Shown here: positions 8,620 through 56,806 of the stretch, piece by piece | How the letters are laid out: every line of letters starts with the position of its first letter | Position numbering within the stretch: the first letter of the stretch is position 1 | DNA from: Octopus bimaculoides | Lineage: Eukaryota | DNA: 64,000 nucleotides | Reading direction: 5' to 3' | Assembly (NCBI RefSeq): GCF_001194135.2 | Contig: NC_068990.1 | Location: 70,639,582-70,703,581 of the forward strand | The notes under the pieces: generated by a model | Database searches by the model: none | What the model was told of the DNA's origin: nothing | The model's input: the letters and a program-made list of their open reading frames with translations, nothing else | Position numbers and translations under genes: made by a program

Positions 8620-9793
8620 CAGGGGTTGGACAAAATAATGGAAACACCTTGCATCATAATTTTTAAATATCTATAAAACCATCGAAAGCTTGCTTATTTT
8701 TGTTTTTTGATTTATTATTAGTGTTGCTTAATATGTTTTGCTAAAACTGCTGTTTCTTTTCGGATATCATCAGAATAAGGTAATCAAAATTCATTAAAAT
8801 AACAAATCTATCGGACTTTCAAAGAGGTCAAATTGTTGGTGCTCGTATGGCAGGCGCTAGCATAATGAAAACAGCCGAAATATTTGGTGAATCAAGAAGT
8901 ACTCTCTTGAAAGTAATGACAGCCTTTGAGAACAAGGGAAAAACCTCCTCGTCAAAACAAAATTCTGGAAGAAAACCAAAACTTTCAGATAGGAACCGTC
9001 GGACTCTTATGCGAACTGTTAGAAAGGATCGCAAAAGTACAGGTCCCAAAATTACTGCAAAGCTTAATGACCACCTCAAGAACCCAATCTCCACAAAAAC
9101 TGTTCACCAGGAGCTGCACAAAGCCTGATTTCAGAAAACCACTACTTTCAAAAACAAACATTGCGAAACGTTTAGAGTGGAGTAAAAACCTACAGAATTG
9201 GTCCCTAGAGCAGTGGAAGAATGTTATTTTCTCAGACGAGTCATCCTTTACCTTATTTCCAACCACCAGCCAAGTATACGTGTGGAGACAGCCAAAAGAA
9301 GCATCTGACCCAGACTACCTTCTTCCAACTGTTAAACATGAAGGAGGATCTGTGATAATTTGGGGAGCTATATCTTGGAAATCCGCCAGCCCAATGGTTC
9401 CCCTTCATTGCAGAATTAATAATCAAGACTATTTAAGCATTTTATCTGATCAAATTCATCCTATAGTTGTGGAACTGTTTCCTGAGGGAAACACAATCTT
9501 TCAGGATGATAATGCACCAATTCATACAGCTAAAGTTGTTACTGAATGGCACGAGGAACATTCTAGTGAAATGGAACATCTTATCTGGCCACCACAGTCG
9601 CCAGATCTCAATACTATTGAACATTTATGATGCATTTTAGAAAAACAAGTAAGGATTCAATATCCTCCACCATCATCACTACAAGAACTGGAGACTTTTT
9701 TAGCTGAAGAATGAACAAAATTCCTTTGGAAACAATTCAAACTTTGTATGAGTCCATACCTCGTAGAATTCAAGCTGTAATTACTGCCAAAGG
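8620..9793 (+). mobile_element. Tc1-family DNA transposon relic with DD36E catalytic spacing; right end missing
   Basis: Left TIR CAGGGGTTGGACAAAATAATGGAAACACCT. Transposase GRKPKLSDR, IFSDESSF, GGSVIIWGAIS, FQDDNAPIH, WPPQSPDLNTIEH, interrupted by a stop (9126-9128) and a frameshift. Confidence 0.92.
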
Positions 9794-12204: not shown

Positions 12205-15200
12205 TCATCATCATCATCATCATCGTTTAACGTCCGCTTTCCATGCTAGCATGGGTTGGACGATTTGACTGAGGACTGGTGAAACCGGATGGCAACACCA
12301 GACTCCAATCTAATTTGGCAGAGTTTCTACAGCTGGATGCCCTTCCTAACGCCAACCACTCAGAGTGTAGTGGGTGCTTTTACGTGTCACCCGCACGAAA
12401 ACGGCCACGCTCGAAATGGTGTCTTTTATGTGCCNNNNNNNNNNNNNNNNNNNNNNNNNNNNNNNNNNNNNNNNNNNNNNNNNNNNNNNNNNNNNNNNNN
12501 NNNNNNNNNNNNNNNNNNNNNNNNNNNNNNNNNNNNNNNNNNNNNNNNNNNNNNNNNNNNNNNNNNNNNNNNNNNNNNNNNNNNNNNNNNNNNNNNNNNN
12601 NNNNNNNNNNNNNNNNNNNNNNNNNNNNNNNNNNNNNNNNNNNNNNNNNNNNNNNNNNNNNNNNNNNNNNNNNNNNNNNNNNNNNNNNNNNNNNNNNNNN
12701 NNNNNNNNNNNNNNNNNNNNNNNNNNNNNNNNNNNNNNNNNNNNNNNNNNNNNNNNNNNNNNNNNNNNNNNNNNNNNNNNNNNNNNNNNNNNNNNNNNNN
12801 NNNNNNNNNNNNNNNNNNNNNNNNNNNNNNNNNNNNNNNNNNNNNNNNNNNNNNNNNNNNNNNNNNNNNNNNNNNNNNNNNNNNNNNNNNNNNNNNNNNN
12901 NNNNNNNNNNNNNNNNNNNNNNNNNNNNNNNNNNNNNNNNNNNNNNNNNNNNNNNNNNNNNNNNNNNNNNNNNNNNNNNNNNNNNNNNNNNNNNNNNNNN
13001 NNNNNNNNNNNNNNNNNNNNNNNNNNNNNNNNNNNNNNNNNNNNNNNNNNNNNNNNNNNNNNNNNNNNNNNNNNNNNNNNNNNNNNNNNNNNNNNNNNNN
13101 NNNNNNNNNNNNNNNNNNNNNNNNNNNNNNNNNNNNNNNNNNNNNNNNNNNNNNNNNNNNNNNNNNNNNNNNNNNNNNNNNNNNNNNNNNNNNNNNNNNN
13201 NNNNNNNNNNNNNNNNNNNNNNNNNNNNNNNNNNNNNNNNNNNNNNNNNNNNNNNNNNNNNNNNNNNNNNNNNNNNNNNNNNNNNNNNNNNNNNNNNNNN
13301 NNNNNNNNNNNNNNNNNNNNNNNNNNNNNNNNNNNNNNNNNNNNNNNNNNNNNNNNNNNNNNNNNNNNNNNNNNNNNNNNNNNNNNNNNNNNNNNNNNNN
13401 NNNNNNNNNNNNNNNNNNNNNNNNNNCTCACTAGAAATAAGGCATCAGTAGTGCTTTTACCTGGCACGAACTCAAACTGCATCTCATTTAAATTGATTCG
13501 CTCCCTAATTAGTTGGGCTATGACCCTCTCTGTAACTTTCATAACCTGATCTAACAGCTTGATGCCTCTGTAATTATTTGTATCTAAAGCGTCACCTTTA
13601 CCTTTGTAGCGTCACCTTTACCTTTGTAGTCATTGGGTACGACTCCTTCGTGTATCACCTGGTTCGTAATACGGGTGACTAGGCTATAGCCAACACTGCC
13701 AGATATTTTGAGCATCTCTGCAGTGATACCTGATGGGCCGGGGGCTTTCCCAGTCTTCATACTCTTAATTGCTTTATCTACCCTGGTACTATCAACGCGG
13801 ATAGCTGGTCCCTCTATTGGGTCGACATACGGCAGGCTCTCTTCCTCCCATTCATTCTCTTTATTAAGCAATCTATCGTAGTGGCATCTCCAGACCTCTT
13901 TCTTTACATCATTTAGTGCAAGCGTACCATCATCCATGCGAACACATTTCTCTCCTANNNNNNNNNNNNNNNNNNNNNNNNNNNNNNNNNNNNNNNNNNN
14001 NNNNNNNNNNNNNNNNNNNNNNNNNNNNNNNNNNNNNNNNNNNNNNNNNNNNNNNNNNNNNNNNNNNNNNNNNNNNNNNNNNNNNNNNNNNNNNNNNNNN
14101 NNNNNNNNNNNNNNNNNNNNNNNNNNNNNNNNNNNNNNNNNNNNNNNNNNNNNNNNNNNNNNNNNNNNNNNNNNNNNNNNNNNNNNNNNNNNNNNNNNNN
14201 NNNNNNNNNNNNNNNNNNNNNNNNNNNNNNNNNNNNNNNNNNNNNNNNNNNNNNNNNNNNNNNNNNNNNNNNNNNNNNNNNNNNNNNNNNNNNNNNNNNN
14301 NNNNNNNNNNNNNNNNNNNNNNNNNNNNNNNNNNNNNNNNNNNNNNNNNNNNNNNNNNNNNNNNNNNNNNNNNNNNNNNNNNNNNNNNNNNNNNNNNNNN
14401 NNNNNNNNNNNNNNNNNNNNNNNNNNNNNNNNNNNNNNNNNNNNNNNNNNNNNNNNNNNNNNNNNNNNNNNNNNNNNNNNNNNNNNNNNNNNNNNNNNNN
14501 NNNNNNNNNNNNNNNNNNNNNNNNNNNNNNNNNNNNNNNNNNNNNNNNNNNNNNNNNNNNNNNNNNNNNNNNNNNNNNNNNNNNNNNNNNNNNNNNNNNN
14601 NNNNNNNNNNNNNNNNNNNNNNNNNNNNNNNNNNNNNNNNNNNNNNNNNNNNNNNNNNNNNNNNNNNNNNNNNNNNNNNNNNNNNNNNNNNNNNNNNNNN
14701 NNNNNNNNNNNNNNNNNNNNNNNNNNNNNNNNNNNNNNNNNNNNNNNNNNNNNNNNNNNNNNNNNNNNNNNNNNNNNNNNNNNNNNNNNNNNNNNNNNNN
14801 NNNNNNNNNNNNNNNNNNNNNNNNNNNNNNNNNNNNNNNNNNNNNNNNNNNNNNNNNNNNNNNNNNNNNNNNNNNNNNNNNNNNNNNNNNNNNNNNNGCC
14901 ATAGCCTCTATGTATGCCATGGAAGCCTCCAGCCACAAAGAGAAGGTCCCTGTCACTCGTTGACGAGGTAGTTTGCAAGAGGGTGTCATAGAATTGGTCT
15001 TTCAGAACATCTGGTAGCCCCGGTTGAGGTGCATAGGCTGAGATGACAGTAGCTAATCTATGATGAAGCACTAGTTTAATCTTAAGTACTCTGTCACTTA
15101 CTCTAACGACCTCGATTACCTTATCCACCCATTTCTCCGCTAGAAGTATTCCTACGCCCCCCGACCCCGTCAGTGTTCCCTGCCCAGAAAATCTTGTACC

Positions 15201-15244
15201 TGTGTTCTTTGCCTGTGAGGAACCTCGCAGAACCTCCTCTCCAG
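12205..15244 (-). mobile_element. RTE LINE, ~3 kb with internal deletions and two assembly gaps, antisense in the last UBA6 intron
   Basis: APE endonuclease motifs WRGGSARFLTGKEHRYKIFWAG and VISAYAPQPG, RT-proximal KAPGPSGITAEMLK and MQFEFVPGKSTTDA, and a (GAT)n-tailed 3'UTR at 12205-12434. Confidence 0.85.
12435..13426. other. Assembly gap (N-run); further gaps at 13958-14897, 27492-27552, 38126-39047, 49285-49294, 56909-57723
   Basis: Runs of n in the sequence. Confidence 1.
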
Positions 15245-15368
15245 CTGACTATTTTAATTTGCTTTGAGATTATTCTAACTTGTACTTGAAAAGGAAGAGC
15301 AGTACTTTTATCAAAACTATTTTCAATACCAAGTTTAGCTAAAGGTTTTCTCATCTCTTTAATTTCAG

Positions 15369-15489
15369 CATGATAAAACTAATCAAACCATTAGCACAGC
15401 AAACGTATGTCGACCTAATTGTGTCTCTGGAATCAGAGGAAGATGAAGACATTCCTGGACCACCTCTACGCTACTATTTTGGATTATGA
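15369..15489 (+). CDS. UBA6: UBA6 terminal coding exon (MIKLIKPLAQQTYVDLIVSLESEEDEDIPGPPLRYYFGL*)
   Basis: tttcag acceptor, phase 2. Matches the UBA6 C-terminus YVDLTVSF...DEDLPGPPVRYYF. TGA at 15487-15489. Confidence 0.95.
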
Positions 15490-15550
15490 TAATTAACCTA
15501 AATTTTAAAGAATTCAAAGTTATAATTGTTGACAAATTCTGTAGATGTCA

Positions 15551-15556
15551 AATAAA
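15551..15556 (+). promoter_or_regulatory. Candidate UBA6 polyadenylation signal AATAAA (another at 15624-15629)
   Basis: Hexamer 62 nt after the stop codon. Usage unverified. Confidence 0.45.
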
Positions 15557-15786
15557 TACTGAATCAAAGCTGGTGTGTTATGTAAATCTTTTGTGAGTTA
15601 TTTTCCATCAACAAAGAAACATCAATAAAAGTGATGTTTCATTTTAAGAAATGTTATTAAAGTAAGAACTCATCAGTTATTACTGAATTAGTATTTATCT
15701 GTTTTAATATAGTTAACCCATTGTTTTAAATTATTGTTTGACAGAGAAAAAGAAATACACTTGAATTCCAGGAAGTTCTAGAATAA

Positions 15787-15792
15787 TTTATT
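15787..15792 (-). promoter_or_regulatory. Candidate IFT46 polyadenylation signal AATAAA
   Basis: tttatt on +, about 530 nt past the IFT46 stop. Usage unverified. Confidence 0.35.
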
Positions 15793-16317
15793 TCATAAAT
15801 ATCAGTGAGGTTGGATCAGATGGAAAGTCAACTGAAATAATAATGTTAAAACAAATGGATGGATTCATTTCTATAAATGTAGTGAAATGGGAACTTATGT
15901 AAGGTAGGTGGTTGAGATGAAAGTGTGGTTTAGAAAGGCCTCTAATTAGGAAATAAGTTGAGAAGAAAGGAAAGTGTTTCATTCTTGTTTGCAGAACGGA
16001 TGTAAATTATTGAGAGAGAAATGGAAGGAAGTAAAAATAAAACAGTTTTATGTAAATGGCAGGAAGGTGGTTGATGAGAGCAAACTGTTGCTTACGAGGA
16101 TACCATGTAAAGAAACTAGTGATGATCTACATCAATAAACTTGTAGCAGTTTGTGGTCAACTTCAGTAGCCAGTCATCATTAAACTTTATCGAACTCTCC
16201 TCCAGCTTCTTATCTTTGGTAGTAAGGCCCCTGTAATGTTAATAAAAACCTGGTTTACTATTTAACATCTTTGAATATTGCAAAATAATAAATCTATTAT
16301 ATGTCTTTCTTTGGTGA

Positions 16318-16419
16318 TTAATTGCCATTTGGAGCTTCATTATCTCCCTCCAAGACTAATTGTTCATTGGGATTGGCTTCTTTCTTCATTTTGTATTCCT
16401 GGGCCAATGTCTGAAAATG
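16318..16419 (-). CDS. IFT46: IFT46 terminal coding exon (HFQTLAQEYKMKKEANPNEQLVLEGDNEAPNGN*)
   Basis: Strong pyrimidine tract plus CAG acceptor, phase 0. HFQTLA continues the conserved NSQ|HFKALA. TAA at 16318-16320. Confidence 0.88.
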   Translation of the reverse strand, partial: HFQTLAQEYKMKKEANPNEQLVLEGDNEAPNGN

Positions 16420-16573
16420 CTGTCAGAATAAAAGAAAAGATATTTTTTTCAGATTTCTTATGCAAAAGATGACAAAACTAGTTGATAATTAAAATTAATG
16501 AACCTATGTAAGGATATTTGAGAAGGATATTGATATTTAATAGAAAATAAAATAATTTGAGATGTACTTATAG

Positions 16574-16838
16574 TGGAAGATGTTTATAAGTCATTTAAGA
16601 ACACAGAAAAATCCATTAGATTCACTTCAACATCTAAATTTAATTTGTGTCAAAATATTTTCATCGTTTTGAAACCACGACCTGTTCACTGACAAAACTT
16701 CAGGCTGCACGGAATTTTGTCAGTGAACAGGTCGTGGTTTCAAAACGATGAAAATATTTCGACACAAATTAAATTTAAATGTTGAAGTGAACCTAACGGT
16801 TTTTTGCATGTTCTTAGATGGCTTATAAACATCTTCCA
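16574..16838. repeat. Long inverted repeat / fold-back (~125-bp arms, 17-nt loop)
   Basis: 16653-16697 is the exact reverse complement of 16715-16759. Outer arms still align, with scattered mismatches. Confidence 0.95.
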
Positions 16839-16909
16839 TGCTGCAGTTGTTAAAATAATCTGAATATCTAATATAGGTACAATGCTTCCAATGTGGGTGG
16901 ATGAGAGTA

Positions 16910-17045
16910 GGATATCTCGCCAATGCAATGTACAGATGTAAACATCAGTAAGAAAACTAACAAAAATGGTACTAGTCAAAAGAAGTCCTTTATATTTGTA
17001 GTGCACTAAGTAACAGATACTCCCTTATCACTCAGGAACAGTTAA
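16910..17045. repeat. Left copy of a 136-bp inverted repeat (partner 19435-19570)
   Basis: 134/136 identical to the reverse complement of 19435-19570. The ORF track shows the same peptide start (MHYKYKGLLLTSTIF...) on opposite strands. Confidence 0.95.
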
Positions 17046-17444
17046 CCAGTAAGTGACCCAGTGCTCACAAATTGTATCAAAAGAAATTTATAAAAAACAG
17101 TTCACTGAATAAATTTCTAGAAGGATAACAGGGAAAGTTGACCTTGGTACAATTAAAACTTGAAACATAGATAAGTGTGGAGCAGAAGAATATATATAGG
17201 GGAGGGTGAGATAAATAATAAATATGAAAGTTGTTAAAGCTGACAAAAGTGAAGTTAGAGATGTTAAAGTCTAATTATTGCTAAGATAAATGTAAATTAA
17301 TGAGGAAGAAGAGGAGGCAGAGGCTTTTCTCTGAATATTTAATTTGATAAAAGAAAATGTGACAAGTGTTTTTTATTAGAACAGACAGCAGTTCACAATT
17401 ATTACATTAATGAATTACAAAGATGACACTGATTAAAAAGAGAA

Positions 17445-18125
17445 AGTGTATTATCCTCATTGCCAATGACACCCTACTGCAATGTAGAAAGATGTACGCT
17501 AATGAAACCCTGTTAGATCTATCACAAACAAAACAACCACACAGTGCCATATTTGATAGAGTTTAAAGGTTTTAGGTCTTGAGTTGTTATTAATGATGCC
17601 AACTATTTAAAGCATCATGGCAATATAAATTAGATTTATTTTTCATAGTGTGTCACAAACTCTGAACTTTACTTATAGTTTAGGTGTGTTACAAGGTTAC
17701 AGCATTACAAAGCAGCAAATAGAAGCTATTAAAATGTTGGATAGAATGCTTCATGATGTCCTGAATCTCTGTACTTGAGGTCAGACAACAAAAAATAAAG
17801 CAACCAATCCAAGGGGTGTAACTGTTGGAATGTTGAATATGGTACATTGTTGTGTCTGCTTTATCCCTTCACTTTCTGATAACAAATGCTTGCAGTGAAA
17901 CAGGTACCAAAATGCATTCCTGAGCCACTGTCAGTCCTCCACAAAAACACCTTGCCCAGGCATGAACATACAGATGCAGAGAATTTGGTCAATAGTGACT
18001 GACAGACGTCTCTAGTGTATTATTTATCACTGCCAATGACAGCCTATTGCAATGTAGAAAAATAAAATCTATCTTGTACAATGTTAGATTTAATCACTAA
18101 TATAAAACAACCACACAGTACCATA
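17445..18125. repeat. Diverged ~110-bp direct duplication (17445-17551 and 18014-18125)
   Basis: Shared agtgtatta..tgccaatgaca.ccta.tgcaatgtagaaa..tgttagat..aaaacaaccacacagt.ccata, with 569-bp spacing. Confidence 0.8.
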
Positions 18126-18349
18126 ACATAATGCCAAAATATAAAGATAATGATGGAGTCACCAGAGACTTGGTTAACTTGCTAAAAATAGCAGCCTAAT
18201 TTCCCTCAAATCACAATGCTTGAAAAGTTAAGGACACTAGTAAAATGATGATTGGAATGACTATTCAAAAGTCCCTTCAATCAGGGATGTCCTGGAACTA
18301 AACAACAAGGATCATCAGAGACTAAAGATTGATAGAAACAATGACTCAC

Positions 18350-18511
18350 TTGAGAATTCTGGAATTCATTGTACAAAGTAAAGAGAACATGGAGAGCTTG
18401 GATCATATCATTGTTGTGGCTGGTCTGATACACTGGTATGTCTAATATACAACAAATAGCTCGAATATAGTCAGCCAAGCTGGTATCCATACTGGCACTC
18501 GGCAATGACAC
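18350..18511 (-). CDS. IFT46: IFT46 exon (VSLPSASMDTSLADYIRAICCILDIPVY...LHVLFTLYNEFQNSQ)
   Basis: TAG acceptor and GTGAGT donor. 162 nt, phase 0-0. Matches IFT46 ICAILDIPVY...LHLLFSLYSEFKNSQ. Confidence 0.95.
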
Positions 18512-18899
18512 CTACAATACAATGGAAACAGGAGACAACAGGAATTGTTTTAGATATAAAAGAAAATAAATTAAACTTTCTGTTCACATTAATTACTTTT
18601 CTAGATTTAGTCTTAAATTTAAGTCTTTATGGAAGAAAATGTAGTAAATATCTTTACATATTGGACATTAATCATATTGTAGAATTTATGAATGAACAAA
18701 ACTGGTTCTTTGAGGTAATATCACTACTATCTTTGGACAGAAATATCATCAGGTTCATTAGAATCTAATTACTATTTTAGAAAAAATAGGCTAGTAAGCA
18801 GGGAAGCAGACAAATTACTAATCTCTTCAGTGTAGCCAGTGCAAGGTATGGACACATAAGAGATGTAGTGGAATTGCAGGAAGATTAAGAAGAGAAAGT

Positions 18900-19290
18900 A
18901 GCACTTGTATGTGGCAGAGGTGCAAGGAAAAATGAGCATTAAGAATGTACAGGAAATAGATTCCTTCAGATACCCAGAAGGATCCTTAGAGGTAATAGAT
19001 AATTTTTGTTACCTAGAAGACCAAATCAATGGTGGAGGAGGATGCTCCGAAAGTATTGTTATTAGAATAAGTACTGACTAGCCAAAGTTCAGAGAGCTAT
19101 TACCTTTGTTGGTAACAAATGGCCTATCCCTCAGAGTGAAAGACAGATTATATGATGCCTCCATAGAAACAGCTATGCTACATGGTAGTGAAACCTAGTC
19201 TGAAAATGCAGAAGATATGTGAAGGCTTGAAAGAAATGAAGCCAGTGTGTTCCACTGGAAATGCAATGTCTGATGTCAGGCTGCACCAAA
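18900..19290 (+). mobile_element. RTE LINE C-terminal fragment
   Basis: Degraded LEVIDNFCYLEDQI..GGGCSES..KFRELLPLL..LSLRVKDRLYDA..MLHGSET. Confidence 0.75.
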
Positions 19291-19434
19291 ACATCACATA
19301 GTTTTAGGAAAAATCCAGGATCAATGCACTGCTCATGAAGACTAAGGCCTTGACACAAGAAACACATAAAATTAGAACATTAATATTGCCATTTACCACA
19401 TGTATTTTAACCATGTCTTAGTCACATAGATATC

Positions 19435-19570
19435 TTAACTGTTCCTGGGTGATAAGGGAGTATCTGTTACTTAGTGCACTACAAATATAAAGGACTTCTT
19501 TTGACTAGTACCATTTTTGTTAGTTTTCTTACTGATGTTTACATCTGTACATTGCATTGGCAAGATATCC
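19435..19570. repeat. Right copy of the 136-bp inverted repeat; homology resumes at 19754-19802 after a SINE insertion (~19600-19742)
   Basis: Reverse complement of 16910-17045. 19754-19802 matches the reverse complement of 16813-16868 with a short deletion. Confidence 0.9.
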
Positions 19571-20084
19571 ATGTGCACATGTTGCAGGCTTCACACATAC
19601 TCCATCCACCAAATTCCGTTCACAAAGTATCAGTCAACCAACAATATGGTAGAAGACATTTGCCCCAGAAACCGTACAGTGGGATAGAACCTGAAACCAC
19701 TTGGTTGTAAAACAAACTGCTTAACCATTCAGCCACACCTATGAGGTTATTTAATATTCAGATTATTTTAACAATTACAGCATGGAAGATAAGCCATCTA
19801 AGGTTTAAGATAATCTCATAAGATAAAGCTAACTGCAGAAAGTACCAGTGTAAAGTGGTAAATTTATTTTGTTTTTCTACTTCATTGTTTAACTAAAATA
19901 ATCTTCCATTGTCCTCAGATCCTTAAGTTTTAAACATACAGCTTTATATTCACAAAAACAGGGCACCTGAAGATTGAGCTTACACAATGAAAACACTGCC
20001 TACACAAACAACATTGAATTACGGTTTCATTTCTCAAAACTATAAAAACATCATAAACTAAATTCTAAGAGTTCAAAGATTTAA

Positions 20085-20264
20085 CCAGTTTATTACAATA
20101 TTTCCATTAAAATACACTGTTAATTAATTTCGAAAATAATGAAGAATTTAGTAAAATAATTTTGTCACCATTAAGCAAGTGAAATTTTTCATGGAAGATT
20201 TTAATTCAAATCACTTTAAAACAGGAAGTTTGAATCATAGAACCAGGGATTGGTATCAAAAGGG
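20085..20264. mobile_element. piggyBac-type MITE (same family as 40967-41188)
   Basis: TTAA flanks, right end ggtatcaaaagggTTAA, shared internal aagaatttagtaaaataa and gaagattttaattca. Confidence 0.6.
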
Positions 20265-20381
20265 TTAAAGTAAAATATATGAAGTTTTCTTCAAAACACA
20301 TGACAGAAATAACTGCAAGTATGTCCACAGTTTGACATTTCTTAGAATATAAATGGTAGGGATGACCAAAAGATAACCTAC

Positions 20382-20448
20382 TTCTTTAAGTAATTCTTCC
20401 AACTCGGATGGCCATTCCTGCATCAGGCTGTCTATTGGAGGCATATTC
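20382..20448 (-). CDS. IFT46: IFT46 exon (NMPPIDSLMQEWPSELEELLKE)
   Basis: ttccag acceptor and GTAGGT donor. Phase 2 to 0. Matches PMPDIDTLMQEWSPEFEELL. Confidence 0.95.
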
Positions 20449-20644
20449 CTGGAATATATAAAAAAAAAACAATACAAATTAACAAATAATTTAAGGAGGT
20501 TCTGTTGAATTTGTCCATAGCCTTTTATTTTACAGGGTACAACATTCTATGGTTGGTATAAATAACTGCAACTTAAATATGTAACCTTGTGCAATAATAA
20601 TAATAATAATAACAACAACAACAACAATAGTTATTATAATTATT

Positions 20645-21682
20645 ATTATTACCTCTGCCTTAGCAAAGGCAGGAGTATTGTTTGCAGTTGTGTTTGTTTG
20701 TTTGTTTGTCTGTGGACAAGATATCTCAAGAACCGCTGGATGGATTCAGATAAAACTTTCAGAGATGTTTGGCCTTGTGACTGGCACGAACTGATTAGAT
20801 TTTGAGATTGATCCAGTACCAGACAAGGATTCTGGATTATTTGTTATACTCACTTTACTTTACATGAAGTATTATGATCTTACATTGACTTTCAAGTCTT
20901 TCTTTGATTATCTCCATTGAAAACACACTCATGGTTTCCATGTAAGTTATGGCAGCGTTGCTGTATCCAAAATTTTATTTTCGTTTATTATTAATTTTAT
21001 TCATATCTCTATTTTAGTAGAAACTGATGGATAAAGAAATCAAAGTACATAAACAAATGGCAGCAAAACCATTCAGAAATTAAATAACACTAACATATCC
21101 AGTAACAATAATAAATTTAATTTGTCCTTGACAATTTTTAGTTCTACCAATTTTGAATATATCGCTCCTGTTTAAAATCTCTTACCTCAATTGCATTTCT
21201 AGCTCTGCCTTAGCTTTACTTCCTGAACTCAGGTTTTTGTGTGCAACAATGTTGTTAAACCTCCAATAACAGCACTGTATGCAGGTCCTTTCATGCATAG
21301 ATAAATTTTTTACTATAGACCTTAATGGTTGTAAAGACACTATATCAGTGAATAGACTAAAAAAGGCCTTCATAGAGAAAACTGTGCCTGTTCCCACTGC
21401 AAATGACACACACACACAGCATTATAAACAAACCCCGCATACCCACATTTACATTTCATGACTACCATTGGGATCAATCAGGTACCGGAGAAAGAATTCT
21501 GGATTATTTTTCAGGATTTTTTACTTAATTTTTGAGAGCAGTCAGGTTCATTTTCAGTATTCTCGTTTGTAATAGCAATCAAGTTTATTTCAGATATTCT
21601 CATTTTAAAAATCATCTCCAGCTAATCGTTGAAAGGAGATTGGCGTTGCCTTGGCAGAGGTTTGTGCTCTCTGAGTGCTCTT
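20645..21682 (+). mobile_element. Non-autonomous Helentron (HINE/DINE-1-like) element
   Basis: Subterminal inverted repeats ACCTCTGCC (20651-20659) and GGCAGAGGT (21653-21661). (GTTT)n microsatellite after the 5' subTIR, 3' short hairpin gtgctctctgagtgc, T-rich flanks, repeated core gattctggattattt. Confidence 0.65.
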
Positions 21683-21889
21683 ATTATTATTATAAATCAA
21701 TTAATTAAATTGACATAACTCTTCATGAAGGTAAATACACAATAAAAAGATTGCACTTCTTATTGTGTAATTATTATTGTCATGATATTGTTATTATTAT
21801 TATTATTATTATTACCATATGCTCTGCAGTATTTAGTTACATTCATTAAAATCCCTCCGAAGTCAATAAAGTACTGAGGTGTCACAAAC

Positions 21890-24075
21890 CATCACAAGGC
21901 TTTCTGTGATGGAGAGAGTCTATTTTTATATGCCAAACTTGGCAGCTATCTAACACAAACTGGCAGGCAGAATGGGAGAATTTCCATTTCTGTGAGTTGA
22001 GGAGCTTCAGTATTGCTGAGAAAGGACCTAAACAAGGGGAGATTGCTTGATAATTTTCAGCCCATAATTCTGCTTAACACAGATTTTAAATTTTTTAGCC
22101 AGGAGTTAGCCAAGAGGTTGGTGCTTGTTGTCAATGATCTGGTTAATTAAGTACAAACATAACATGTGCTATCCCATGACAGAGAGGGTAGGTAAGGAAC
22201 TTGGCAAATGGGTTGGGTCCTGCTCAATTTAGATCAATCAAAAGCTTTTGATGGGTGAACCACCAATACTTGGCAGTTGTTCTCATGACAGCTGGTTTCA
22301 ATACTGGCTTTTACTGTTAGATATCTGTAATGAATAGCAACATCTGCTTGGTGATTAAGGTACATTGCCATTTATTGAAACACTTCAGTATGATGCACTC
22401 GGTCTGTCAAAGTTGTTCCCTTTGATCTCTTCTAAATGTGCTGACACTTGAGCCACTACTGCTGACACTAGAGATATTGAGGAGCAGCCCATGTGAACTG
22501 GGATGCAGAAGATTTATGATGGCAAATGCAGATGATGTAACCACTATTGTGTCAGGTACTAGGTATATTGAAGTGATTGGGACTGCTCTAATGAGCCATG
22601 AGACAGTGACAGGAGCAAAAATCAACCAAAGAAAGTCAGTGGACCTGAAACTCATCTCCTGGAGAAGCAGGTCCATATTGTCCAAAAGTATCATGGGATA
22701 CTAGACTAGTTAACTGCTGAATGTCTGGTTTGGTCTAGATCTCCAAGTGGGGAAATGGGATGAGGTGATGAGCAAGGAGACCAATCTCACCTAGAAATGG
22801 GCCCAGAGAAAGCTATCCCTGAGAGGTTGGGCAGAAATGGTAAATGCTTACATCACCTCCATTACATTCTACTGCCTGAGCATTGATCCTTGCCTTAGTT
22901 CACATTTAACTAGACCAGAATGTTCGTTTTTTTCATTTTTTTTAATATGTAAGGGACATGTTCCACTAGTCAGGTGCTTTATTTGCTGACAATACCCTCT
23001 GAGTGGAGGACTGGGTATGCTGTGGCTGAAGATGTGCAGACATGCACTGGGGCTGCAACATCTTTAGCAATTCTTTGCTGGTGAATAGGTATGGTTGCCA
23101 TATGTCAGACTGGTTTTTCAACAGCTCATATCTTTGACAGTCCTGGGTTAAGCAAAGATCAAGCTGGTGCTTAGCATCTGGAATGTCATCAAGCACTCCG
23201 CCCTCCACCAGTTAGGTAATGTAGATAGTATAAGTTCCACTTTGGCATTCTATAGAGAGTTAGTAGTGGGCAAGAGCAACAAGGTTCTTAGGGGAGGCTG
23301 ATTGTTGACAAAAGTCAATTGGCTGATCTGTTTCAGATCATATTTGGACCATGGACATGGATAATTTCCTGAAATCTTTGGCCTGGCAGTGCTATGGGGT
23401 GGTGGTTAAGGTACAGCCCAGAAATGCTGTCAGCCAAGTTTGCCCAAGATGCACCCATGGTAGCACAAGCACTCATCCAATGCCCAAGCATTGTGGAGTT
23501 CTGTCAAATGGCTGCTATCAAGTGTAGGTAGGTTGGGTTATCAGCTGAATCTATTGTGAAAATTGTCCAACTGCCTTCTTTTGGCCACGAAGGACAGGCA
23601 ATGTTTATTTGGTGGCCTTGATGAAAAAGCTTGTATGGTGATGACACAGAAAGGGCTGAAGACAGATACCCCTCCAAACTTTCTCTTTGGTCAAGCCTCA
23701 CCTCACTACATTCCAAAAGGAAAATGAGGGTAAAAAAGAAAGTGCTGCCACCCAGCATATTTGTTGAAATATGGGCAAGAGTGGCAAGCATGGTTTGAAT
23801 GAATAGGTCTACCCTGAGCATGCCTCTGTAGAGAGGAGGATAACAGGGAGAAGGCACTTGCCATAGTGGTCATGGTAATTGTGGTTGTGGTTTTGTGTGG
23901 TTTCCAGGAGCAGCCCTCAGAGGTCTCCTGCTTTTGGGGTATTATTGCTTGGAATTTATTGTTTCTTTGTTACTGTTATCCTTCTTTTTACATGTTCTTT
24001 TAAGTAACTACACATTGTATTGTCCTATACCATCCCCAGTGTTTTCTGAAACATAACTGGTTAACAAAGAAAATA
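21890..24075 (+). mobile_element. Tx1-like (L1-clade) LINE, 5'-truncated and degraded
   Basis: Degraded RT (PIILLNTDFK, NLDQSKAFDG, ANADDVTTIV, GAKINQRKS, QRKLSLRGWAE), a C-terminal Cys motif (VCPRC) and a 3' end before (ATT)n. Boundaries approximate. Confidence 0.7.
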
Positions 24076-24927
24076 TCACTATTATTATTATTTAGGCAAA
24101 GTTAACCTCAAACCCTGCCAAGGTTAACTTCACCTTTCATTCCTCCAAGGTTTATAAATTAAAGTACCAGTCAAGTACAAGGACTGACAGTATCAACTAG
24201 TCTGCTCTTCACAAAATTGTTGACTTTGTACCTAAATCAGAGACCATTATTATTCTTATTATTACAGATTACAAAAAGTGTTTCAGATAATTGGATAAGG
24301 TATTGGGTTCCCAGAACATTATGCCTCAGTTGAGCAAGTTGTTGGAAAATAGTGATCAAATTTTGAGGATGTGTTAAAAGAGAAAAACTAGCATTCTATC
24401 ATTAGGGAGATTTATCTCTCATATTTGATACAAGTACTGCTGAATACTGGCTTTGCAGAGAAATTTATCATTTATATAGGTGTGTGTGTGTATGTGTGTG
24501 CACGCTCACACAGTAGGAGTTTGTGGTATTCTGTCATCTTTTCCTCCACCCCAGCAATGTATTGACAAGACCACAAAATCAATGAATTCATTCTAAAAAG
24601 AGTCAACACAAGGCCACTTAGCAGAAACATCACGGAATGAAGATAAAAACTGACCAAGTCCAGCTACCAGAACAACATTATTCTAAAACAGCTTTCAAAT
24701 GAACACCACCAGAGAGAAAAAGAAATAGAGGAAGACTGAAAAGTACATGGCACAAAACCATTGAGAACCAACCTAAGATAGACCAATATCAATGGCTGGA
24801 TGTAGAGAAAATTGCCCACCAACAGAAATCGGTGGTGTCAACTTGTCACCTAATGTGCTTGAGAATATGGGAGAAACTAATACTGAGAGTTAATTCCAGA
24901 AGATTCTAAAATAAATCAACAACTTAC

Positions 24928-25040
24928 TTGGTGTAATGTACATTGGGTGGTGGCTTTGATCGATGTAATTTATCAATATTCTGGATCCAGTTATCAATCT
25001 GCTTTGGGTCTTTTTCAGCTTGTTCTAGACTTTTCACAAC
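24928..25040 (-). CDS. IFT46: IFT46 exon (VVKSLEQAEKDPKQIDNWIQNIDKLHRSKPPPNVHYT)
   Basis: ttacag acceptor and GTAAGT donor. Phase 0 to 2. Matches VKSLEDAEKNPKAIDTWIESISELHRSKPPATVHY. Confidence 0.96.
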
Positions 25041-25959
25041 CTGTAACAAAGAAAACATACAATTCTGCAAACAACATTTTGGAATTAAGTGATAAAAAGT
25101 CTCAGGGTATTTTGTGGACATTTACTAAATACTTATATTAGTATCAACTACTGTATTGGTAGGATGTGACCCAAGTGCTTGGCCCTCCACTGTGCTGAGA
25201 ATGGAGGGCCAAGGAAAACAAGGGAAGTAATGGTAAGATTAGATCTCAGAAAGTTAATTCTCAAAGATTAGATAACACAAGAGTATCAGAAGTGGTGCTA
25301 GGCTGTTTAACTGATGCTAGCATGAACACAGATGCAATGATTAAAGGCTGAGAAGAAATATGGTATTTCTCATAATCTTCTATATATTCAGGATCATTAA
25401 TTCTGGCAGAGCTAATCAGGTTTGACAAGAATCAATAGAGAAATCAGATGCAAACAAAATCTAATCCTGCATATTGTAGATAGCATGTCAAGGTTAGCAT
25501 GGTTTGGGTCGAGCAAACACATATTGTAAAATATTTCTATGTTAGAGAAGTTTTGGGAATGAATAACAAAAATTGGAGAAAAGATATTTCCAATTTTTTC
25601 ATGACTATTGTTTGTCACAGACACAAAGGAAGCAAATAGCAAATTGGAAGAATTATAAGACAAAATGTCTTTTAGCATTTAATTCCAAACCTTAATATTC
25701 TCATTTCAAATCCCACCAAAGCCCAACTTGCTTTTCAACATTCTAAAGTTGGAAATAGAATACTAACCAAATATGGTGGAGATGATGAGTGATTTAATGA
25801 GATGATGAGTGATTTAATGAGCTGATGAGGTGTCTCAAAGACTTCTTTAAATAATGAAGCAATATAAATCTGCAACTAACTTTTTAATTACTACTTGAGT
25901 TCTAGTGTAAACTCTCAACAGCCACAATACTTCTGTGAATGGCTGTGCCCTTCCCCATC

Positions 25960-26250
25960 CCTGTCTGTTTTGGAATGGTTTCTACAGATGGATGCCAACC
26001 ACTTTACAGAGTGTACTGGATGCTTTTTATGTGGCATCAACACTAGTGCTATTAACATGGCACCAACACCTGTGGGATCATCAAGAAACTTGTGAAATGA
26101 AGACTTCTCAGCTAGGAAAGGGAGTGCAACCAGGGGAAGTGGATATGAACTAGGTGTGATGTTAGAGTATAATACAGGGATAGAGATAGGTGTCTTACAA
26201 TAGAGGAGATACTTGGTTACCCTAATAGGAGAAGGAAGATGGGAGAACGT

Positions 26251-26287
<37 letters not shown>

Positions 26288-26700
26288 AAGAGTATTAGAT
26301 AGTAGGATAGTGGTGGGTAGAGTATAAGTGGTACAGATGGGATAGAGGGGATATTCCATAAGAATGTGAGGGGAGATGTTTAAAGGCGGGGAAGAGGTGA
26401 CTGTAGTAAGTGATGGAAGGAGAAACTGGAGTGACTAGAAAGGGCTGCAAGATAGATATGTGAGGGCATGGAGAATGTGCAGAGAGGGACATGAGGGAAA
26501 GGGAGGGGCCTGCAGTGGGTAGTGGGAGGGGGGATAATAGGAAGATGGGTCATGGGGGAGTTTTGACAGAGGACAGATTATGTATGCGAGTGGGACATGG
26601 CTATAAAAGACATGCCTGTATATATGGATGGCCATGATTTTACTTAGTTTAATGTCTTGTCAAGCACAGAAAATCACAAAAGTCTTGGTCCCTTGTCAGA
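25960..26700 (-). mobile_element. Degraded RTE LINE 3'UTR
   Basis: ggtttctacagatggatgcc..ccactttacagagtgtactggatgc, then a purine-rich tract and the RTE ORF-end signature (aagtcttggtcccttgtc). Confidence 0.55.
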
Positions 26701-26949
26701 TGACAAGGAACTAATATAAGGTTACTGCAAGATTAAAGTTTCTAAAATTTATTAATTAATGTTTTAATAAACAATCACTAACGGATTCCCATTAAAACTT
26801 ATATGTTAATCATACTGATTAATTTGTAAATGCTGCAAAGTCAAACATTCATGACACCAATAACCAAAGTAGAGTTCAAGCAGCAACAACAGAGGTAGTT
26901 ACAATTCCAAGACAACTCTATCAAAGTATCAAAGTCTAAGAATACTTAC

Positions 26950-27084
26950 CATCTGCTTAGCAGTTGTCTGTTTTGAAATGGTCCTCAATTGTAGATCAAG
27001 CACTGTTGGGTCGGACTGTGCAGCACAAGGCTCGTCTAAAACAGTCAGACCAACCATGTCAGGTTTCATGTCGGGTCTTGGTAT
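26950..27084 (-). CDS. IFT46: IFT46 exon (IPRPDMKPDMVGLTVLDEPCAAQSDPTVLDLQLRTISKQTTAKQM)
   Basis: tttctag acceptor and GTAAGT donor. 135 nt, phase 0-0. Matches VPRPDGKPDNLGLLVLDEPSTKQSDPTVL. Confidence 0.96.
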
Positions 27085-27452
27085 CTAGAAATAAACAATG
27101 AATTGAGATAACTTTCAAGTTGAATTAAATAAACATTATGAGGTTTATAGAAGCAATATAAGTTAAGGTGAGAGAGAATTAATATAAATTAAGGCAGCCT
27201 GCATTTGTACATAAGGTGGAACCTTTTTGATATTGCTTATTTGGCTGTAACCAAATGTGAGATCACATACAGAACAGCTCACTGAAACCACAAGCCAGCT
27301 AAATTCGTTTTATTGTAAAAAATGTGATTTCTGCATCAGTGGCTTTACATTTTCTTCTTTCCCATTGTCATCTCAGAGATAAGTCCCATGTGAAGTTAAA
27401 GTCTTTTCCTATTGCTTCAAATGATAAAACAGTATTATCTAGGTTAACCGCG

Positions 27453-27491
<39 letters not shown>

Positions 27492-27560
27492 NNNNNNNNN
27501 NNNNNNNNNNNNNNNNNNNNNNNNNNNNNNNNNNNNNNNNNNNNNNNNNNNNTATATATA

Positions 27561-29555
27561 TCATCATCATCGTTTAACGTCCACGATCAGTTGTTGCTTT
27601 TTTTATGTGCCACTAGCACAGGAGCCAGTCAGGCGGACCTGGCATCAATCATGTTCGGATAGTGCTTTTTATGTGCCACTGGCACAGGAGCCAGGCAGGT
27701 GAACCTGGCATCAACCACATCTGGATGGTGCTTTTTACATGCCACCGGCACGGGAGCCAGTCAGGGGGGCACTGGCCACTGCTATGATATTGGTTTTACT
27801 TGATGCAACAAGTCTTCTCAAACATATATCATCCAACGTATCAGGGGTATACTTAACAGGGCCAGACGTGCATGGCTGTGATCTCACTTTAGTTGCCGGG
27901 TCTTCTCAATCACAGCATATCTCCAAAGGTCCCAGTCTCCTGCCATTGCCCCTGTGAGGCCCAATGTTCGAAAGTCATATTTCACCACCTCATGCCATGT
28001 CTTCCTGGGTCTACCTCTTCCACAGGTTCCTTCTTCAGTTAGGGAGTGAGACTTTCTCACACAGCTGTCTCCATTCATACCTAACACATGACCATACCAG
28101 TGCAGTTGCCTCTCTTGCACACCCTATTTGATGCTTCTCATGTCCAACTTTTCTCTGAGGGCATGTGTCATGTGTGCACACTGACATTACACATCCAACA
28201 GATCATATTAGCTCCATTTCTTTCAAGCCTATGCATGTCCTCAGCAGTCATGGCCCATGATTCACTGCCATGTAGCATGGCAGTTCACACACATGCATCA
28301 TAAAGTCTACCTTTCACCCTGAGCGAGAGGCCCTTAGTTGCCAGCAGAGATAGGAGCTCCCTGAACTTTGCCCAGGTTATTCATACTCTAGTCGCTACAC
28401 TCTCAGAGGAACTACCCCCACTACAGACTTGGTCACCTATGTAGCGAAAGCTATCAACTACTTCTAGTTTCTTCCTCTGACATGTGATGGAATCTGTTTT
28501 CTGTACATCTTCAGTGTTTATTGCCCCTGTGCATCTGCCACACACAAAAACTATTTTCCAAGTTAACTTTCCTTTGCTTTTGCTGCACCTTTTATCTGTC
28601 CATAGCTTACACTGGGTACATTGTATGGAGTTTCTATGCAAACCTTTTCTACAGATCGAGCAGGGCCATCTACCTGAAGTGGGTTGTGATTTGACAGCCT
28701 TCCTACTTACTAAGACTTTGGTTTTTGCTAGGTTAACCCTAAGGCCCTTTGACCTTGCTTCCACATCCTAAACTTCTGTTCTGGCAGTGACTCAGCTACT
28801 AGAGCAAAGTCATCAGCATATAGGAGCAACCTGTCTTGAATTCCTCTGTTATTACCTGGAGGACTATAATGAATAAGAGGGGGCTGAGGACTGATCCTTG
28901 GTGAACCCCTACTTCTACCAACCCTCACCTTACTGACAGCATCCCTGTATAGAGCTTGTACAGCTCTTACCGGCCACTTGTCTATCCCTAGTTTCCACAT
29001 TGACCACCCAATACAGGATCGGGGGAACCCTGTCAAAAGCTTTCTCCAAATCAACAAAAGCCAAGTACAGAGGTTTATGTTGGTTAGGTACTTCTCCTGC
29101 AGTTGCCTTACCAGAAATATAGCATCAGTGGTGCTTCTGCCTGGCACAAAACCAAACTGCATCTCATCTAGGCTAACTCTCTCCTTAATTAGTTAGGCTA
29201 TGATCCTCTCTGTAACTTTCATCACCTGATCCAATAATTTGATACTCCTGTAGTTATTTCTATTTAAAGCATCACATTTCCTCATGTAGCAGTTGATTGC
29301 TGCTACACCAGTCATTGGGTATGACTCCTTCATGAACTACCTGATTTACAATGCAGGTGACAAGACCATAACCCACACTGCCCGATATTTTAAGCATCCA
29401 AGCGGTGATTCCTGATGGGCCAGGCGCTTTCTCTGACTTCATATCTTTAATTGCTTTATCTACCTGGGTACTGTCGATTCAGATAGCTGGTCCCTCAATT
29501 GGGTTAACTTTTGGCAGACTCTCCTCTTCTCATTCATTCTCCACATTCAGAAACA
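27561..29555 (-). mobile_element. RTE LINE 3' half (RT, PHD-like finger, C-terminus, 3'UTR with three ~66-bp tandem units, (GAT)n tail)
   Basis: ORFs MQFGFVPGRSTTDAIFLVRQLQEKY, LLYADDFALVAES, WPCSICRKG..CTQCKLW..C..CGRC and LHWYGHVL..RGRPRKTW..EKTRQLK*, leading into the tailed UTR. Confidence 0.9.
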
Positions 29556-29564
29556 TTCTGAACA

Positions 29565-53248: not shown

Positions 53249-54404
53249 TAAATAGATAGATAGATAGAGAGAGAGAGAGAGTAAGAGGCTACTTTCAGTT
53301 TCTGCCAACCAAATCTACTCACAAAGCTTTGATTGGTCTGAGATGCAGTAGAAGACTATTAACCAACGTTCCATACAATGGTAATGAACCTGGAACCATG
53401 TAGCTGGAAAGCAAACTTCCTAACTACACAGCTATACCTATGCCTATGACTTAAAACAGCATAAAACAAACAATAAAAATTTATATCTACATATATCTAA
53501 TATATTATACATACATGGAACACTCACATATAGTACTCAGAGTTTCCTGGCAAGCCACAGGTATGAAGTTATCTGATTTCCAACCAGTATCTCAAAACAT
53601 GTACCCCTATTCAACAGTTGATAAATAATGTCATGTATGTTGATTATTAATCGGAAATTGGGTAAGTTCTCTTGCAGAGAAACTCAAAGTACTATATGTA
53701 AGTGTTTCATTTTTGTATGATGTATTAAATATACTCTTCTATTTCAATGATATTGAGGCCTACATCTTTTGCTGTTACACATATATATCCATTAGTGGTA
53801 AATGTAAACATCAGAAAGAAAAATGAAGAACAGGCACTTTCAAATGGAGATAATGCGTGGTGTTTGTTGCATGCTGAGTGATACAGAAAATCCCTCATCA
53901 TTCACACATCATTGAACCAATGATTGGTTCATTAGATTCCTATAACTATCAATGTTAGTTGTTCACTTATTCATTGATGTATGTGTGGTAGCTTTTTTAT
54001 AAATAAGGTATATGCAGGTCAGTGTCTAAACCTCAGCCATTAAACAAAATTGCTTATAAAAGAGATAATTAAAAGAAAATGTCAGTTTTTAATGTCATAT
54101 TTGCTGTAGCTGACTTTTATACTTAAAAATTTGTGTGTGTGTGTGAGAGAGAGACAAAGAGAGGAAAGTGTATTTGCAATCTACATTAGTGATTAGAATA
54201 CCATTTAGTTATTAATTTGTAACAATATTAAAGAATAAATATTAATTAGTGATAACATAGAGAAAGTGTTTTCTTTATTAAACAGTAGATATTTTATTAT
54301 GAGAATGTCTATAATTAAAATGTAGGTAATTAAAATGTCAGAGCAGTAACTAAGATATTATTTCTATTGAAACATGAAATAATTATTTCTAAACAAATTT
54401 TTAC

Positions 54405-56723: not shown

Positions 56724-56773
56724 ATTATTATTATTATTATCATTACTATTATTATTATTATTATTATCATTAC

Positions 56774-56806
<33 letters not shown>

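What the first reader, a model, noticed from the sequence alone, without database searches (positions are those of the whole stretch)
16910..19570. Near-identical 136-bp inverted repeats bracket a frame-symmetric IFT46 exon
Seen: 16910-17045 and 19435-19570 are 134/136 identical in opposite orientation, much closer than other repeat pairs compared here. They sit in the two introns around the 162-nt phase 0-0 exon 18350-18511. Established: flanking inverted repeats promote exon loop-out, back-splicing and ADAR editing, and the IFT46 C-terminal domain binds IFT52. Inference: pairing could give an in-frame IFT46 lacking most of its IFT52-binding region, and/or a 162-nt circRNA. This is the best candidate for an undescribed regulatory module in the window.
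Basis: partly seen in the sequence, partly recalled or inferred. Interest (0 to 1): 0.7.

Follow-up and report, generated by a model that had tools for sequence, protein, structure and literature searches.

The report
Intronic inverted repeat flanking IFT46 exon
Two nearly identical 136-base copies of a repeat-derived sequence lie in opposite orientation in the introns on either side of the second-to-last coding exon of the cilium gene IFT46; this is an ordinary by-product of repeat-rich introns, and no evidence available here shows that it regulates the gene.

Summary
Arms 16910-17045 and 19435-19570 match at 134/136 in inverted orientation and are the closest repeat pair in the window (98.5%; next 93.8%, median 74%). 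They lie in the two introns around a 162-nt phase 0-0 exon (18511-18350, minus strand). That exon encodes the last 48 of 211 positions of the IFT46_B_C domain.

The arms are not an isolated module. They are the best-preserved block of a longer collinear inverted duplication. An outer 61-nt block (16813-16873 / 19802-19748) matches at 51/55 aligned bases. A tRNA-type SINE 5' part lies between the blocks in the right copy, and only remnants of it remain in the left copy. A diverged third copy sits at 53755-53904. The introns also hold a LINE fragment and a 265-nt palindrome.

As RNA the arms are predicted to pair fully (-235.5 kcal/mol) and loop out the exon. The arm alone has no structure and matches no Rfam family.

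Most likely this is a young, passive, repeat-derived intronic duplex. It would probably be edited by ADAR and would give at most minor circular or exon-skipped by-products. The exon is short and its splice sites are strong. No RNA data, source genome or orthologous introns were reachable, so the regulatory reading is untested. Interest is low.

The parts
16910..17045 (.). Left arm of the inverted repeat. It lies in the last IFT46 intron and is the downstream arm in the minus-strand pre-mRNA.
   Evidence: 134/136 match to the reverse complement of 19435-19570. Only two close copies in the window.
19435..19570 (.). Right arm of the inverted repeat. It lies in the second-to-last IFT46 intron and is the upstream arm in the pre-mRNA. 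It is separated by only 5 nt from a SINE 5' part.
18350..18511 (-). 162-nt phase 0-0 second-to-last coding exon of IFT46 (54 aa, VSLPSAS...EFQNSQ), looped out by the arm pairing.
   Evidence: Splice sites. PF12317 positions 164-211, E 9.5e-16. Aligns to 4uzz_A residues 55-107 and 8bd7_D residues 266-311.
20382..20448 (-). Upstream IFT46 exon (..NMPPIDSLMQEWPSELEELLKE), ending in phase 0.
16318..16419 (-). Last coding exon of IFT46 (HFQTLAQEYK...NGN, stop TAA at 16320-16318).
16813..16873 (.). Outer block A, left copy. It is collinear with the arm, 36 nt away on the outer side.
   Evidence: Matches 19802-19748 at 51/55 aligned bases plus one 6-nt indel; blastn E 1e-12, nhmmer E 7e-6.
19748..19802 (.). 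Outer block A', right copy.
19576..19743 (-). 5' part of a tRNA-type SINE, in sense orientation in the pre-mRNA, lying between A' and the right arm. The sequence shows an A-box-like TGGCTGAATGG and a B-box-like GGTTCTATCCC.
   Evidence: Aligns to at least 6 other copies in the window (31548-31387, 41925-42329, 44714-44591, 53443-53286, 63638-63808, 61896-61812) at nhmmer E 1e-14 to 0.05. ARAGORN calls no tRNA.
16874..16909 (.). 36-nt spacer in the left copy, with apparent remnants of the SINE: TAGGT at its start, and AATGTGGGTGGATGAGAGTA directly abutting the arm.
   Evidence: Local alignment to the SINE body, p about 0.004-0.011 against shuffles. Global alignment.
16574..16838 (.). MITE-like palindrome: two 124-nt arms, 92% complementary, with a 17-nt loop. 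Its right end overlaps the start of block A.
   Evidence: It forms a 119-bp local hairpin in the predicted pre-mRNA fold.
18828..19270 (+). LINE 3' fragment in the upstream intron, antisense to IFT46.
   Evidence: About 69% identity to 2439-2836 and 28183-28623. The copy at 2439-2836 adjoins an RVT_1 reading frame at 2826-3353, E 4e-19.
53755..53904 (+). Diverged third relative of the arm sequence. No SINE head lies upstream of it.
   Evidence: nhmmer E 5e-4 with the arm as query and 1e-3 with the whole right unit.

Best explanation
The arms are the best-preserved block of an evolutionarily young, repeat-derived inverted duplication. This duplication placed two copies of one segment (block A, a tRNA-type SINE, then the 136-nt block) in opposite orientation in the last two IFT46 introns. 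The left copy later lost most of the SINE.

In the minus-strand pre-mRNA the two 136-nt blocks pair into a near-perfect duplex with one G-U pair and one A-C mismatch. The duplex encloses a 2389-nt loop that contains the 162-nt exon.

Shown here: the anatomy, the gene model and the predicted pairing.

Inferred: the usual fate of such a duplex in an animal is clustered A-to-I editing of the intronic arms by ADAR, followed by intron removal and normal exon inclusion. Back-splicing to a 162-nt circle and in-frame exon skipping would be at most minor by-products. Nothing indicates a selected regulatory device.
For: - Identity and uniqueness of the arms.
- Three collinear homologous blocks in both copies. 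Block A matches at 51/55 aligned bases. A SINE-body remnant abuts the left arm (p 0.004-0.011). The arm itself is the third block.
- The right arm lies 5 nt from a SINE 5' part that has at least 6 other copies in the window.
- A diverged third copy at 53755-53904 suggests the arm sequence belongs to an old dispersed repeat.
- The introns also hold a LINE fragment and a palindrome, and the window holds reverse-transcriptase and DDE-transposase remnants.
- Both arm differences are transitions, one in a CpG, as expected of real divergence.
- The arm alone folds no better than shuffled sequence (z 0.26 and 0.01) and matches no Rfam family.
- The arm-arm duplex is -235.5 kcal/mol, and 135 pairs form in the minimum-energy fold of both introns plus the exon.
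- Animal A-to-I editing mainly targets dsRNA from young repeats (PMC9989829).
- Not all repeats support circularisation, and very stable hairpins can inhibit it. ZKSCAN1 exon inserts of 400 nt or less circularised poorly or not at all (PMC4201285).
- The exon has a long polypyrimidine tract and a GTGAGT donor.
Against: - At 98.5%, the arm pair stands out from every other repeat pair in the window. The arm is somewhat better preserved than its flanks (Fisher p 0.058 for substitutions, 0.005-0.02 counting indels). That is also what selection for pairing, or gene conversion, would give.
- Homology stops exactly at the 3' end of the arm in both copies (p 0.37 beyond it). This fits an element terminus better than a random duplication breakpoint.
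- A 136-bp near-perfect repeat is well above the 30-40 nt that suffices for circularisation in minigenes (PMC4201285), so some back-splicing or skipping is quite possible.
- No expression, copy-number or comparative data could be obtained.
Confidence: 0.65

Rival explanations
1. Selected regulatory module. The pairing is maintained by selection or by gene conversion. It controls inclusion of the second-to-last exon or makes a functional 162-nt circular RNA. The skipped form would be an in-frame IFT46 lacking 54 residues of its C-terminal IFT52-binding domain.
For: - Full predicted pairing across the exon.
- The exon is frame-symmetric, so the skipped product stays in frame.
- The arm is better preserved than its flanks and than any other repeat pair in the window.
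- Complementary matches promote both back-splicing and skipping in vivo (PMC8330042). Repeats of 30-40 nt are sufficient in minigenes (PMC4201285).
- IFT52C helix 3 packs on IFT46C helices 4 and 5, and the C-terminal domain is needed for IFT-B core integrity (PMC4210449). The exon aligns to the C-terminal half of that fragment.
Against: - No RNA evidence.
- The arms are repeat-derived and about 0.9 and 1.3 kb from the splice sites.
- The 162-nt exon is far below the sizes that circularised well (PMC4201285).
- The splice sites are strong.
- One exon in three is frame-symmetric by chance.
- The heterogeneity in preservation is only marginal for substitutions (p 0.058).
- A literature search combining IFT46 with circRNA, exon-skipping and back-splicing terms listed no paper that mentions IFT46.
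Confidence: 0.08
2. Two independent insertions of a very young, high-copy mobile element that happened to land in adjacent introns in opposite orientation.
For: - Homology ends sharply at the same 3' terminus in both copies.
- In the right copy the arm starts GGATATCTT and is followed by GATATCT, which gives short terminal repeats. An ATGTG(C)AC motif lies on both sides and could be a target-site duplication (read by eye).
- A diverged third copy exists at 53755-53904.
Against: - Only two close copies in 64 kb, and both lie within 2.7 kb of each other.
- Both copies share the outer block A and SINE material in the same order and orientation. Independent insertions would not share these unless the whole composite is the element.
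- The left copy lacks the terminal GATATCT and has no clear target-site duplication.
- No further copy was found in metagenome or viral collections, but these hardly sample animal genomes.
Confidence: 0.15
3. Assembly artefact: one arm was placed wrongly in a draft short-read assembly.
For: The window is a draft scaffold with six runs of N. A 136-bp repeat is close to short-read length.
Against: - Both arms lie inside one gap-free 12.6-kb stretch.
- Their flanks are unique and differ from each other.
- They differ at two transition sites.
- A more diverged collinear block accompanies them. A mis-join would not create that.
Confidence: 0.04

Closest known systems
Intronic reverse-complementary matches (for example inverted Alu pairs) flanking circularised or skipped exons: human ZKSCAN1, HIPK3 and EPHB4 (PMC4201285), C. 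elegans zip-2 (PMC8330042)
   Same: Complementary sequences sit in the two introns flanking an exon with canonical splice sites. They are derived from repeats and are predicted to pair and bring the splice sites together.
   Different: No back-splice or skip junction has been observed here. The enclosed exon is 162 nt, shorter than the exons that circularised efficiently in the minigene work. The arms are 923 and 1304 nt from the splice sites. No conservation data are available.
Repeat-derived intronic dsRNA hyper-edited by ADAR (PMC9989829)
   Same: The two copies are young, have low divergence, lie in inverted orientation within one transcript and give a long near-perfect duplex. At 136 nt and 98.5% this is well above the 50 nt and 80% identity used there to call potential dsRNA.
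   Different: Editing was not measured. The arm centres are about 2.5 kb apart, slightly beyond the +/-2 kb window used in that study. The lineage of the window and its ADAR repertoire were not established.
Mouse Sry circular RNA, a single exon flanked by long inverted repeats (as discussed in PMC4201285)
   Same: A single exon is enclosed by near-perfect inverted genomic repeats.
   Different: The Sry repeats are far longer: 400 complementary nt were proposed to be needed there. The Sry exon is much larger than 162 nt (from my own knowledge, not checked here). The arms here are 136 nt.

Membership tests
Complementary-sequence pair flanking a circularisable or skippable exon | At least about 30-40 nt of complementarity between the two introns flanking the exon | tested here: met
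   136 nt, 134/136. Duplex -235.5 kcal/mol, formed in the global fold.
Complementary-sequence pair flanking a circularisable or skippable exon | The enclosed exon has canonical 3' and 5' splice sites usable for back-splicing | tested here: met
   ttgtag|GTGTCA and CAA|gtgagt.
Complementary-sequence pair flanking a circularisable or skippable exon | A back-splice junction or a skip junction is observed in RNA and depends on the arms | not testable with these tools
   No transcriptome data for the source organism could be reached.
Complementary-sequence pair flanking a circularisable or skippable exon | The pairing is conserved in orthologous introns | not testable with these tools
   The protein database holds no close IFT46 relative (best 58% identity). 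DNA scans found only chance matches.
ADAR hyper-editing substrate | A long intramolecular duplex from nearby inverted copies (at least 50 nt at 80% identity or more) | tested here: met
   Criterion as in PMC9989829.
ADAR hyper-editing substrate | Clustered A-to-G differences between RNA and DNA in the arms | not testable with these tools
   No RNA-seq available.
tRNA-type SINE family of this window | The arm sequence matches the region shared by the SINE copies | tested here: not met
   The shared SINE region ends at about 19576, and the arm starts at 19570. A full-length copy (41925-42329) used as query does not reach into the arm. The arm might be a subfamily-specific 3' part, but the third copy at 53755-53904 has no SINE head upstream.
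DNA transposon whose terminal inverted repeats are the two arms | A target-site duplication immediately outside the two arms, and an interior that is dispensable | tested here: not met
   The outer flanks GAGAGTA and CATGTGC are unrelated. The interior contains a conserved IFT46 exon.
Structured non-coding RNA gene (Rfam) | A match to a covariance model, or a fold better than shuffled sequence | tested here: not met
   No hit at gathering score in the window. No hit on the arms at E up to 1. Fold z-scores 0.26 and 0.01.
IFT46 (Pfam PF12317, IFT46_B_C), for the host gene | A significant match above the curated cut-off | tested here: met
   146.8 bits against a 22.2 cut-off, positions 103-211. 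Upstream exons found by tblastn at 31934-31863, 30849-30751, 27084-26932 and 25037-24912 (alignment ends).

The most novel reading that the evidence does not exclude
The 136-bp pairing is kept near-perfect by selection or recurrent gene conversion because it sets the inclusion level of the second-to-last IFT46 exon, or produces a small circular RNA. The skipped form would be an in-frame IFT46 lacking the helices that clasp IFT52, and it could tune or poison IFT-B core assembly in particular ciliated cell types.
Probability: 0.06. Interest if true: 0.55.

Novelty: new member of a known kind. Interest (0 to 1): 0.2.

Why it matters
If the arms did drive regulated skipping of this exon, it would be a repeat-born switch acting on a core intraflagellar-transport subunit. 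It would also be a natural test of how short an exon can be circularised.

As things stand it is one more example of a very common situation: inverted repeat copies in neighbouring introns of a repeat-rich animal gene. Their expected consequence is intronic dsRNA and ADAR editing with no effect on the mature mRNA. Its practical value is as a concrete, easily tested locus once RNA-seq from the source species is at hand.

Tried and rejected
1. Structured RNA gene in the arm: rejected. No Rfam hit, no tRNA, and folding no better than shuffles.
2. The arms as terminal inverted repeats of one 2.66-kb transposon: rejected. There is no target-site duplication, and a conserved exon lies inside.
3. The arm as part of the common SINE core: not supported. 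It merely abuts a SINE 5' part.
4. Gene conversion as a necessary explanation for 98.5% against lower identity in the flanks: not required. Substitution identity of block A is 51/55, and the difference from the arm is marginal (p 0.058).
5. Finding more copies or orthologues led nowhere. An exact 26-mer gave 0 metagenome hits. A degenerate 21-mer conserved between the arm and the third copy gave 23 metagenome hits, none with a significant match to the query beyond the seed (six weak nhmmer matches, E 0.44-6.7), and 0 viral hits. A protein search with the C-terminal IFT46 peptide found only fragments at 58% identity or less, none from the source species.
6. Homology beyond the 3' end of the arm: none (p 0.37).
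7. Lineage: the full-length SINE copy at 41925-42329 resembles, from my memory only, the abundant octopus SINE. No tool here could test this, so I do not rely on it.

Full report
**Observation**

16910-17045 and 19435-19570 are 136 nt long, 134/136 complementary, with 2389 nt between them.
- Both differences are transitions, and one falls in a CpG.
- A 60-nt piece of the arm occurs only at these two sites in the window, with none expected by chance.
- A self-comparison of the whole window ranks this pair first at 98.5%. The next pair is 93.75%, and the median for pairs of at least 100 nt is 74%.
- The window is a draft scaffold with six runs of N, but both arms lie in one gap-free stretch, 14898-27491.

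**Gene context**

The host gene is IFT46, on the minus strand.
- The exon 18511-18350 is bounded by a long polypyrimidine tract plus AG, and by CAA|GTGAGT.
- Its 54 residues match Pfam IFT46_B_C positions 164-211 (E 9.5e-16).
- They also match residues 55-107 of the 116-residue Tetrahymena IFT46 chain 4uzz_A and residues 266-311 of Chlamydomonas IFT46.
- The neighbouring exons are 20448-20382 (ends ...LKE before GTAGGT) and 16419-16318 (HFQTLAQ... to TAA).
- The joined peptide aligns without a break to PF12317 positions 103-211 (E 9.3e-43).
- Further upstream exons lie at about 25037-24927, 27084-26950, 30849-30751 and 31934-31863.

So the exon is the second-to-last coding exon, it is phase 0-0, and skipping it would delete 54 residues in frame. 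That is roughly the C-terminal half of the crystallised IFT46C fragment. IFT52C helix 3 packs against helices 4 and 5 of that fragment (PMC4210449). That the exon covers those two helices is my inference. In Pfam terms the exon is 48 of 211 domain positions, so 'most of the IFT52-binding region' is too strong.

**What the arms are**

The arms are not a free-standing 136-nt unit.
- On the outer side of each arm lies a second homologous block: 16813-16873 against 19802-19748. It matches at 51/55 aligned bases with one 6-nt indel, in the same order and relative orientation.
- Between the two blocks, the right copy carries the 5' part of a tRNA-type SINE (19743 down to 19576). A-box-like and B-box-like motifs are visible in the sequence. 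The family has at least six other copies in the window.
- The left copy has only a 36-nt spacer. The spacer begins with the first bases of the SINE (TAGGT). It ends, directly against the arm, with AATGTGGGTGGATGAGAGTA, which matches the SINE body (p 0.004-0.011 against shuffles).

The simplest history is one inverted duplication of a segment [block A, SINE, 136-nt block], followed by internal deletions in the left copy.

The arm is somewhat better preserved than its flanks. The difference is marginal for substitutions (p 0.058) and clearer if indels are counted (p 0.005-0.02). Gene conversion or selection on the arm is therefore possible but not required.

Homology stops at the 3' end of the arm in both copies. 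This looks like an element terminus and keeps alive the rival of two independent insertions of a composite element.

A diverged third relative of the arm lies at 53755-53904 (nhmmer E 5e-4 to 1e-3). It has no SINE head upstream. The arm sequence therefore probably belongs to an old dispersed repeat that I could not classify.

The same introns also contain:
- a LINE 3' fragment at 18828-19270, related to a copy next to an RVT_1 reading frame;
- a 265-nt palindrome at 16574-16838;
- a 78% direct repeat at 17445-17551 / 18014-18125.

**What the arms are not**
- The arm folds no better than shuffled sequence on either strand.
- Nothing in the window reaches an Rfam gathering score. A permissive scan of 16400-20400 puts no hit on the arms. 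No tRNA gene is called.
- The arms are not the terminal repeats of a transposon. The outer flanks show no target-site duplication, and the interior holds a conserved exon.

**How it most likely works**

The minus-strand pre-mRNA contains the right arm first, 923 nt upstream of the exon's acceptor. The complement in the left arm lies 1304 nt downstream of the donor.
- ViennaRNA predicts a duplex of -235.5 kcal/mol with one G-U pair and one A-C mismatch.
- In the minimum-energy fold of the 3962-nt stretch covering both introns and the exon, 135 arm-arm pairs form.
- In that fold, blocks A and A' add 32 pairs, and the palindrome folds on itself with 119 pairs.
- No competing partner for the arm exists within either intron.

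That the duplex can form is therefore well supported computationally. What follows from it is inference from published work.
- In animals, A-to-I editing primarily targets dsRNA made by young, low-divergence repeats (PMC9989829). Clustered editing of the arms is the most likely consequence, and it would leave the spliced mRNA unchanged.
- Complementary intronic sequences of 30-40 nt are enough to drive circularisation in minigenes. However, not all repeats work, and more stable hairpins can inhibit. ZKSCAN1 exon inserts of 400 nt or less circularised poorly or not at all, although a 360-nt circle from another gene did form (PMC4201285).

With a 162-nt exon and strong splice sites, I expect at most low levels of a circle or a skipped mRNA.

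**Comparison with known systems, and novelty**

The locus works like the known class of repeat-derived complementary intron pairs, such as Alu pairs in human genes or the matches in zip-2. It also resembles repeat-derived ADAR substrates. It meets the sequence-level criteria of both classes. The defining RNA-level criteria (junction reads, dependence on the arms, editing clusters, conservation) could not be tested.

A literature search combining IFT46 with circRNA, exon-skipping and back-splicing terms listed no paper that mentions IFT46. I file the locus as a new member of a known kind.

**Limits**

I could not reach the source genome, its transcriptome or any orthologous intron.
- The protein search found only IFT46 fragments at 58% identity or less.
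- An exact 26-mer from the arm gave no metagenome hit.
- A degenerate 21-mer gave 23 metagenome hits with no significant similarity to the query beyond the seed, and no viral hits.
- The lineage was not established. The full-length SINE copy resembles the abundant octopus SINE from memory only, and I do not rely on that.

**Verdict**

My best estimates:

| Reading | Probability |
|---|---|
| Passive, young, repeat-derived intronic duplex | about 0.65 |
| Two independent insertions of a young element | 0.15 |
| Selected regulatory module | 0.08 |
| Mis-assembly | 0.04 |

Interest is 0.2.

Noticed in passing
window 16574-16838: A MITE-like perfect-hairpin palindrome: two 124-nt arms, 92% complementary, with a 17-nt loop. 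It lies in the last IFT46 intron, about 155 nt upstream of the final acceptor, and its end overlaps block A of the inverted duplication. It is predicted to form a 119-bp local hairpin in the pre-mRNA, so it is another likely dsRNA and editing substrate.
   Followed up: partly
window 19576-19743, 31387-31548, 41925-42329, 44591-44714, 53286-53443, 61812-61896, 63638-63808: A family of tRNA-type SINEs with A-box-like and B-box-like motifs. The shared region is about 150 nt and is usually followed by TG, TA or TC microsatellite. Only 41925-42329 looks full length. Its 3' half has no other copy in the window.
   Followed up: partly
window 2418-3819, 13427-13875, 28166-29557, 18828-19270: Copies of a LINE-like retroelement at 69-80% identity. 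The reading frame 2826-3353 (minus strand) matches reverse transcriptase RVT_1 at E 4e-19.
   Followed up: partly
window 8926-9630 (+): A 234-aa reading frame matching DDE_3 (E 1.9e-11). A helix-turn-helix match to HTH_Tnp_Tc3_2 is weak and below the Pfam cut-off (E 0.0068). This looks like a Tc1/mariner-type transposase remnant.
   Followed up: no
window 12435-13426, 13958-14897, 27492-27552, 38126-39047, 49285-49294, 56909-57723: Six runs of N (scaffold gaps), which mark the window as a draft assembly. The gap at 27492-27552 lies inside an IFT46 intron. These gaps also explain the apparent low-GC windows in the composition profile.
   Followed up: yes
window 4472-4711 vs 35726-35965; 4614-4861; 27600-27765: The second-closest repeat pair in the window (94% over 240 nt). 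It contains 66-nt and 113-nt tandem units rich in CACC/GCCAGTC motifs, and related tandem units occur at 27600-27765. The element type is unknown.
   Followed up: no
window 17445-17551 and 18014-18125: A direct repeat of about 110 nt at 78% identity inside the intron between the 162-nt exon and the left arm.
   Followed up: no
window 56668-58290 and 59784-59871: Long, degenerate ATT/TAT trinucleotide microsatellite arrays on either side of a scaffold gap.
   Followed up: no
window 16318-31934 (minus strand): At least seven IFT46 coding exons spread over more than 15.6 kb, with repeat-rich introns. The N-terminal exons were not located and may lie further upstream, beyond 32 kb.
   Followed up: partly
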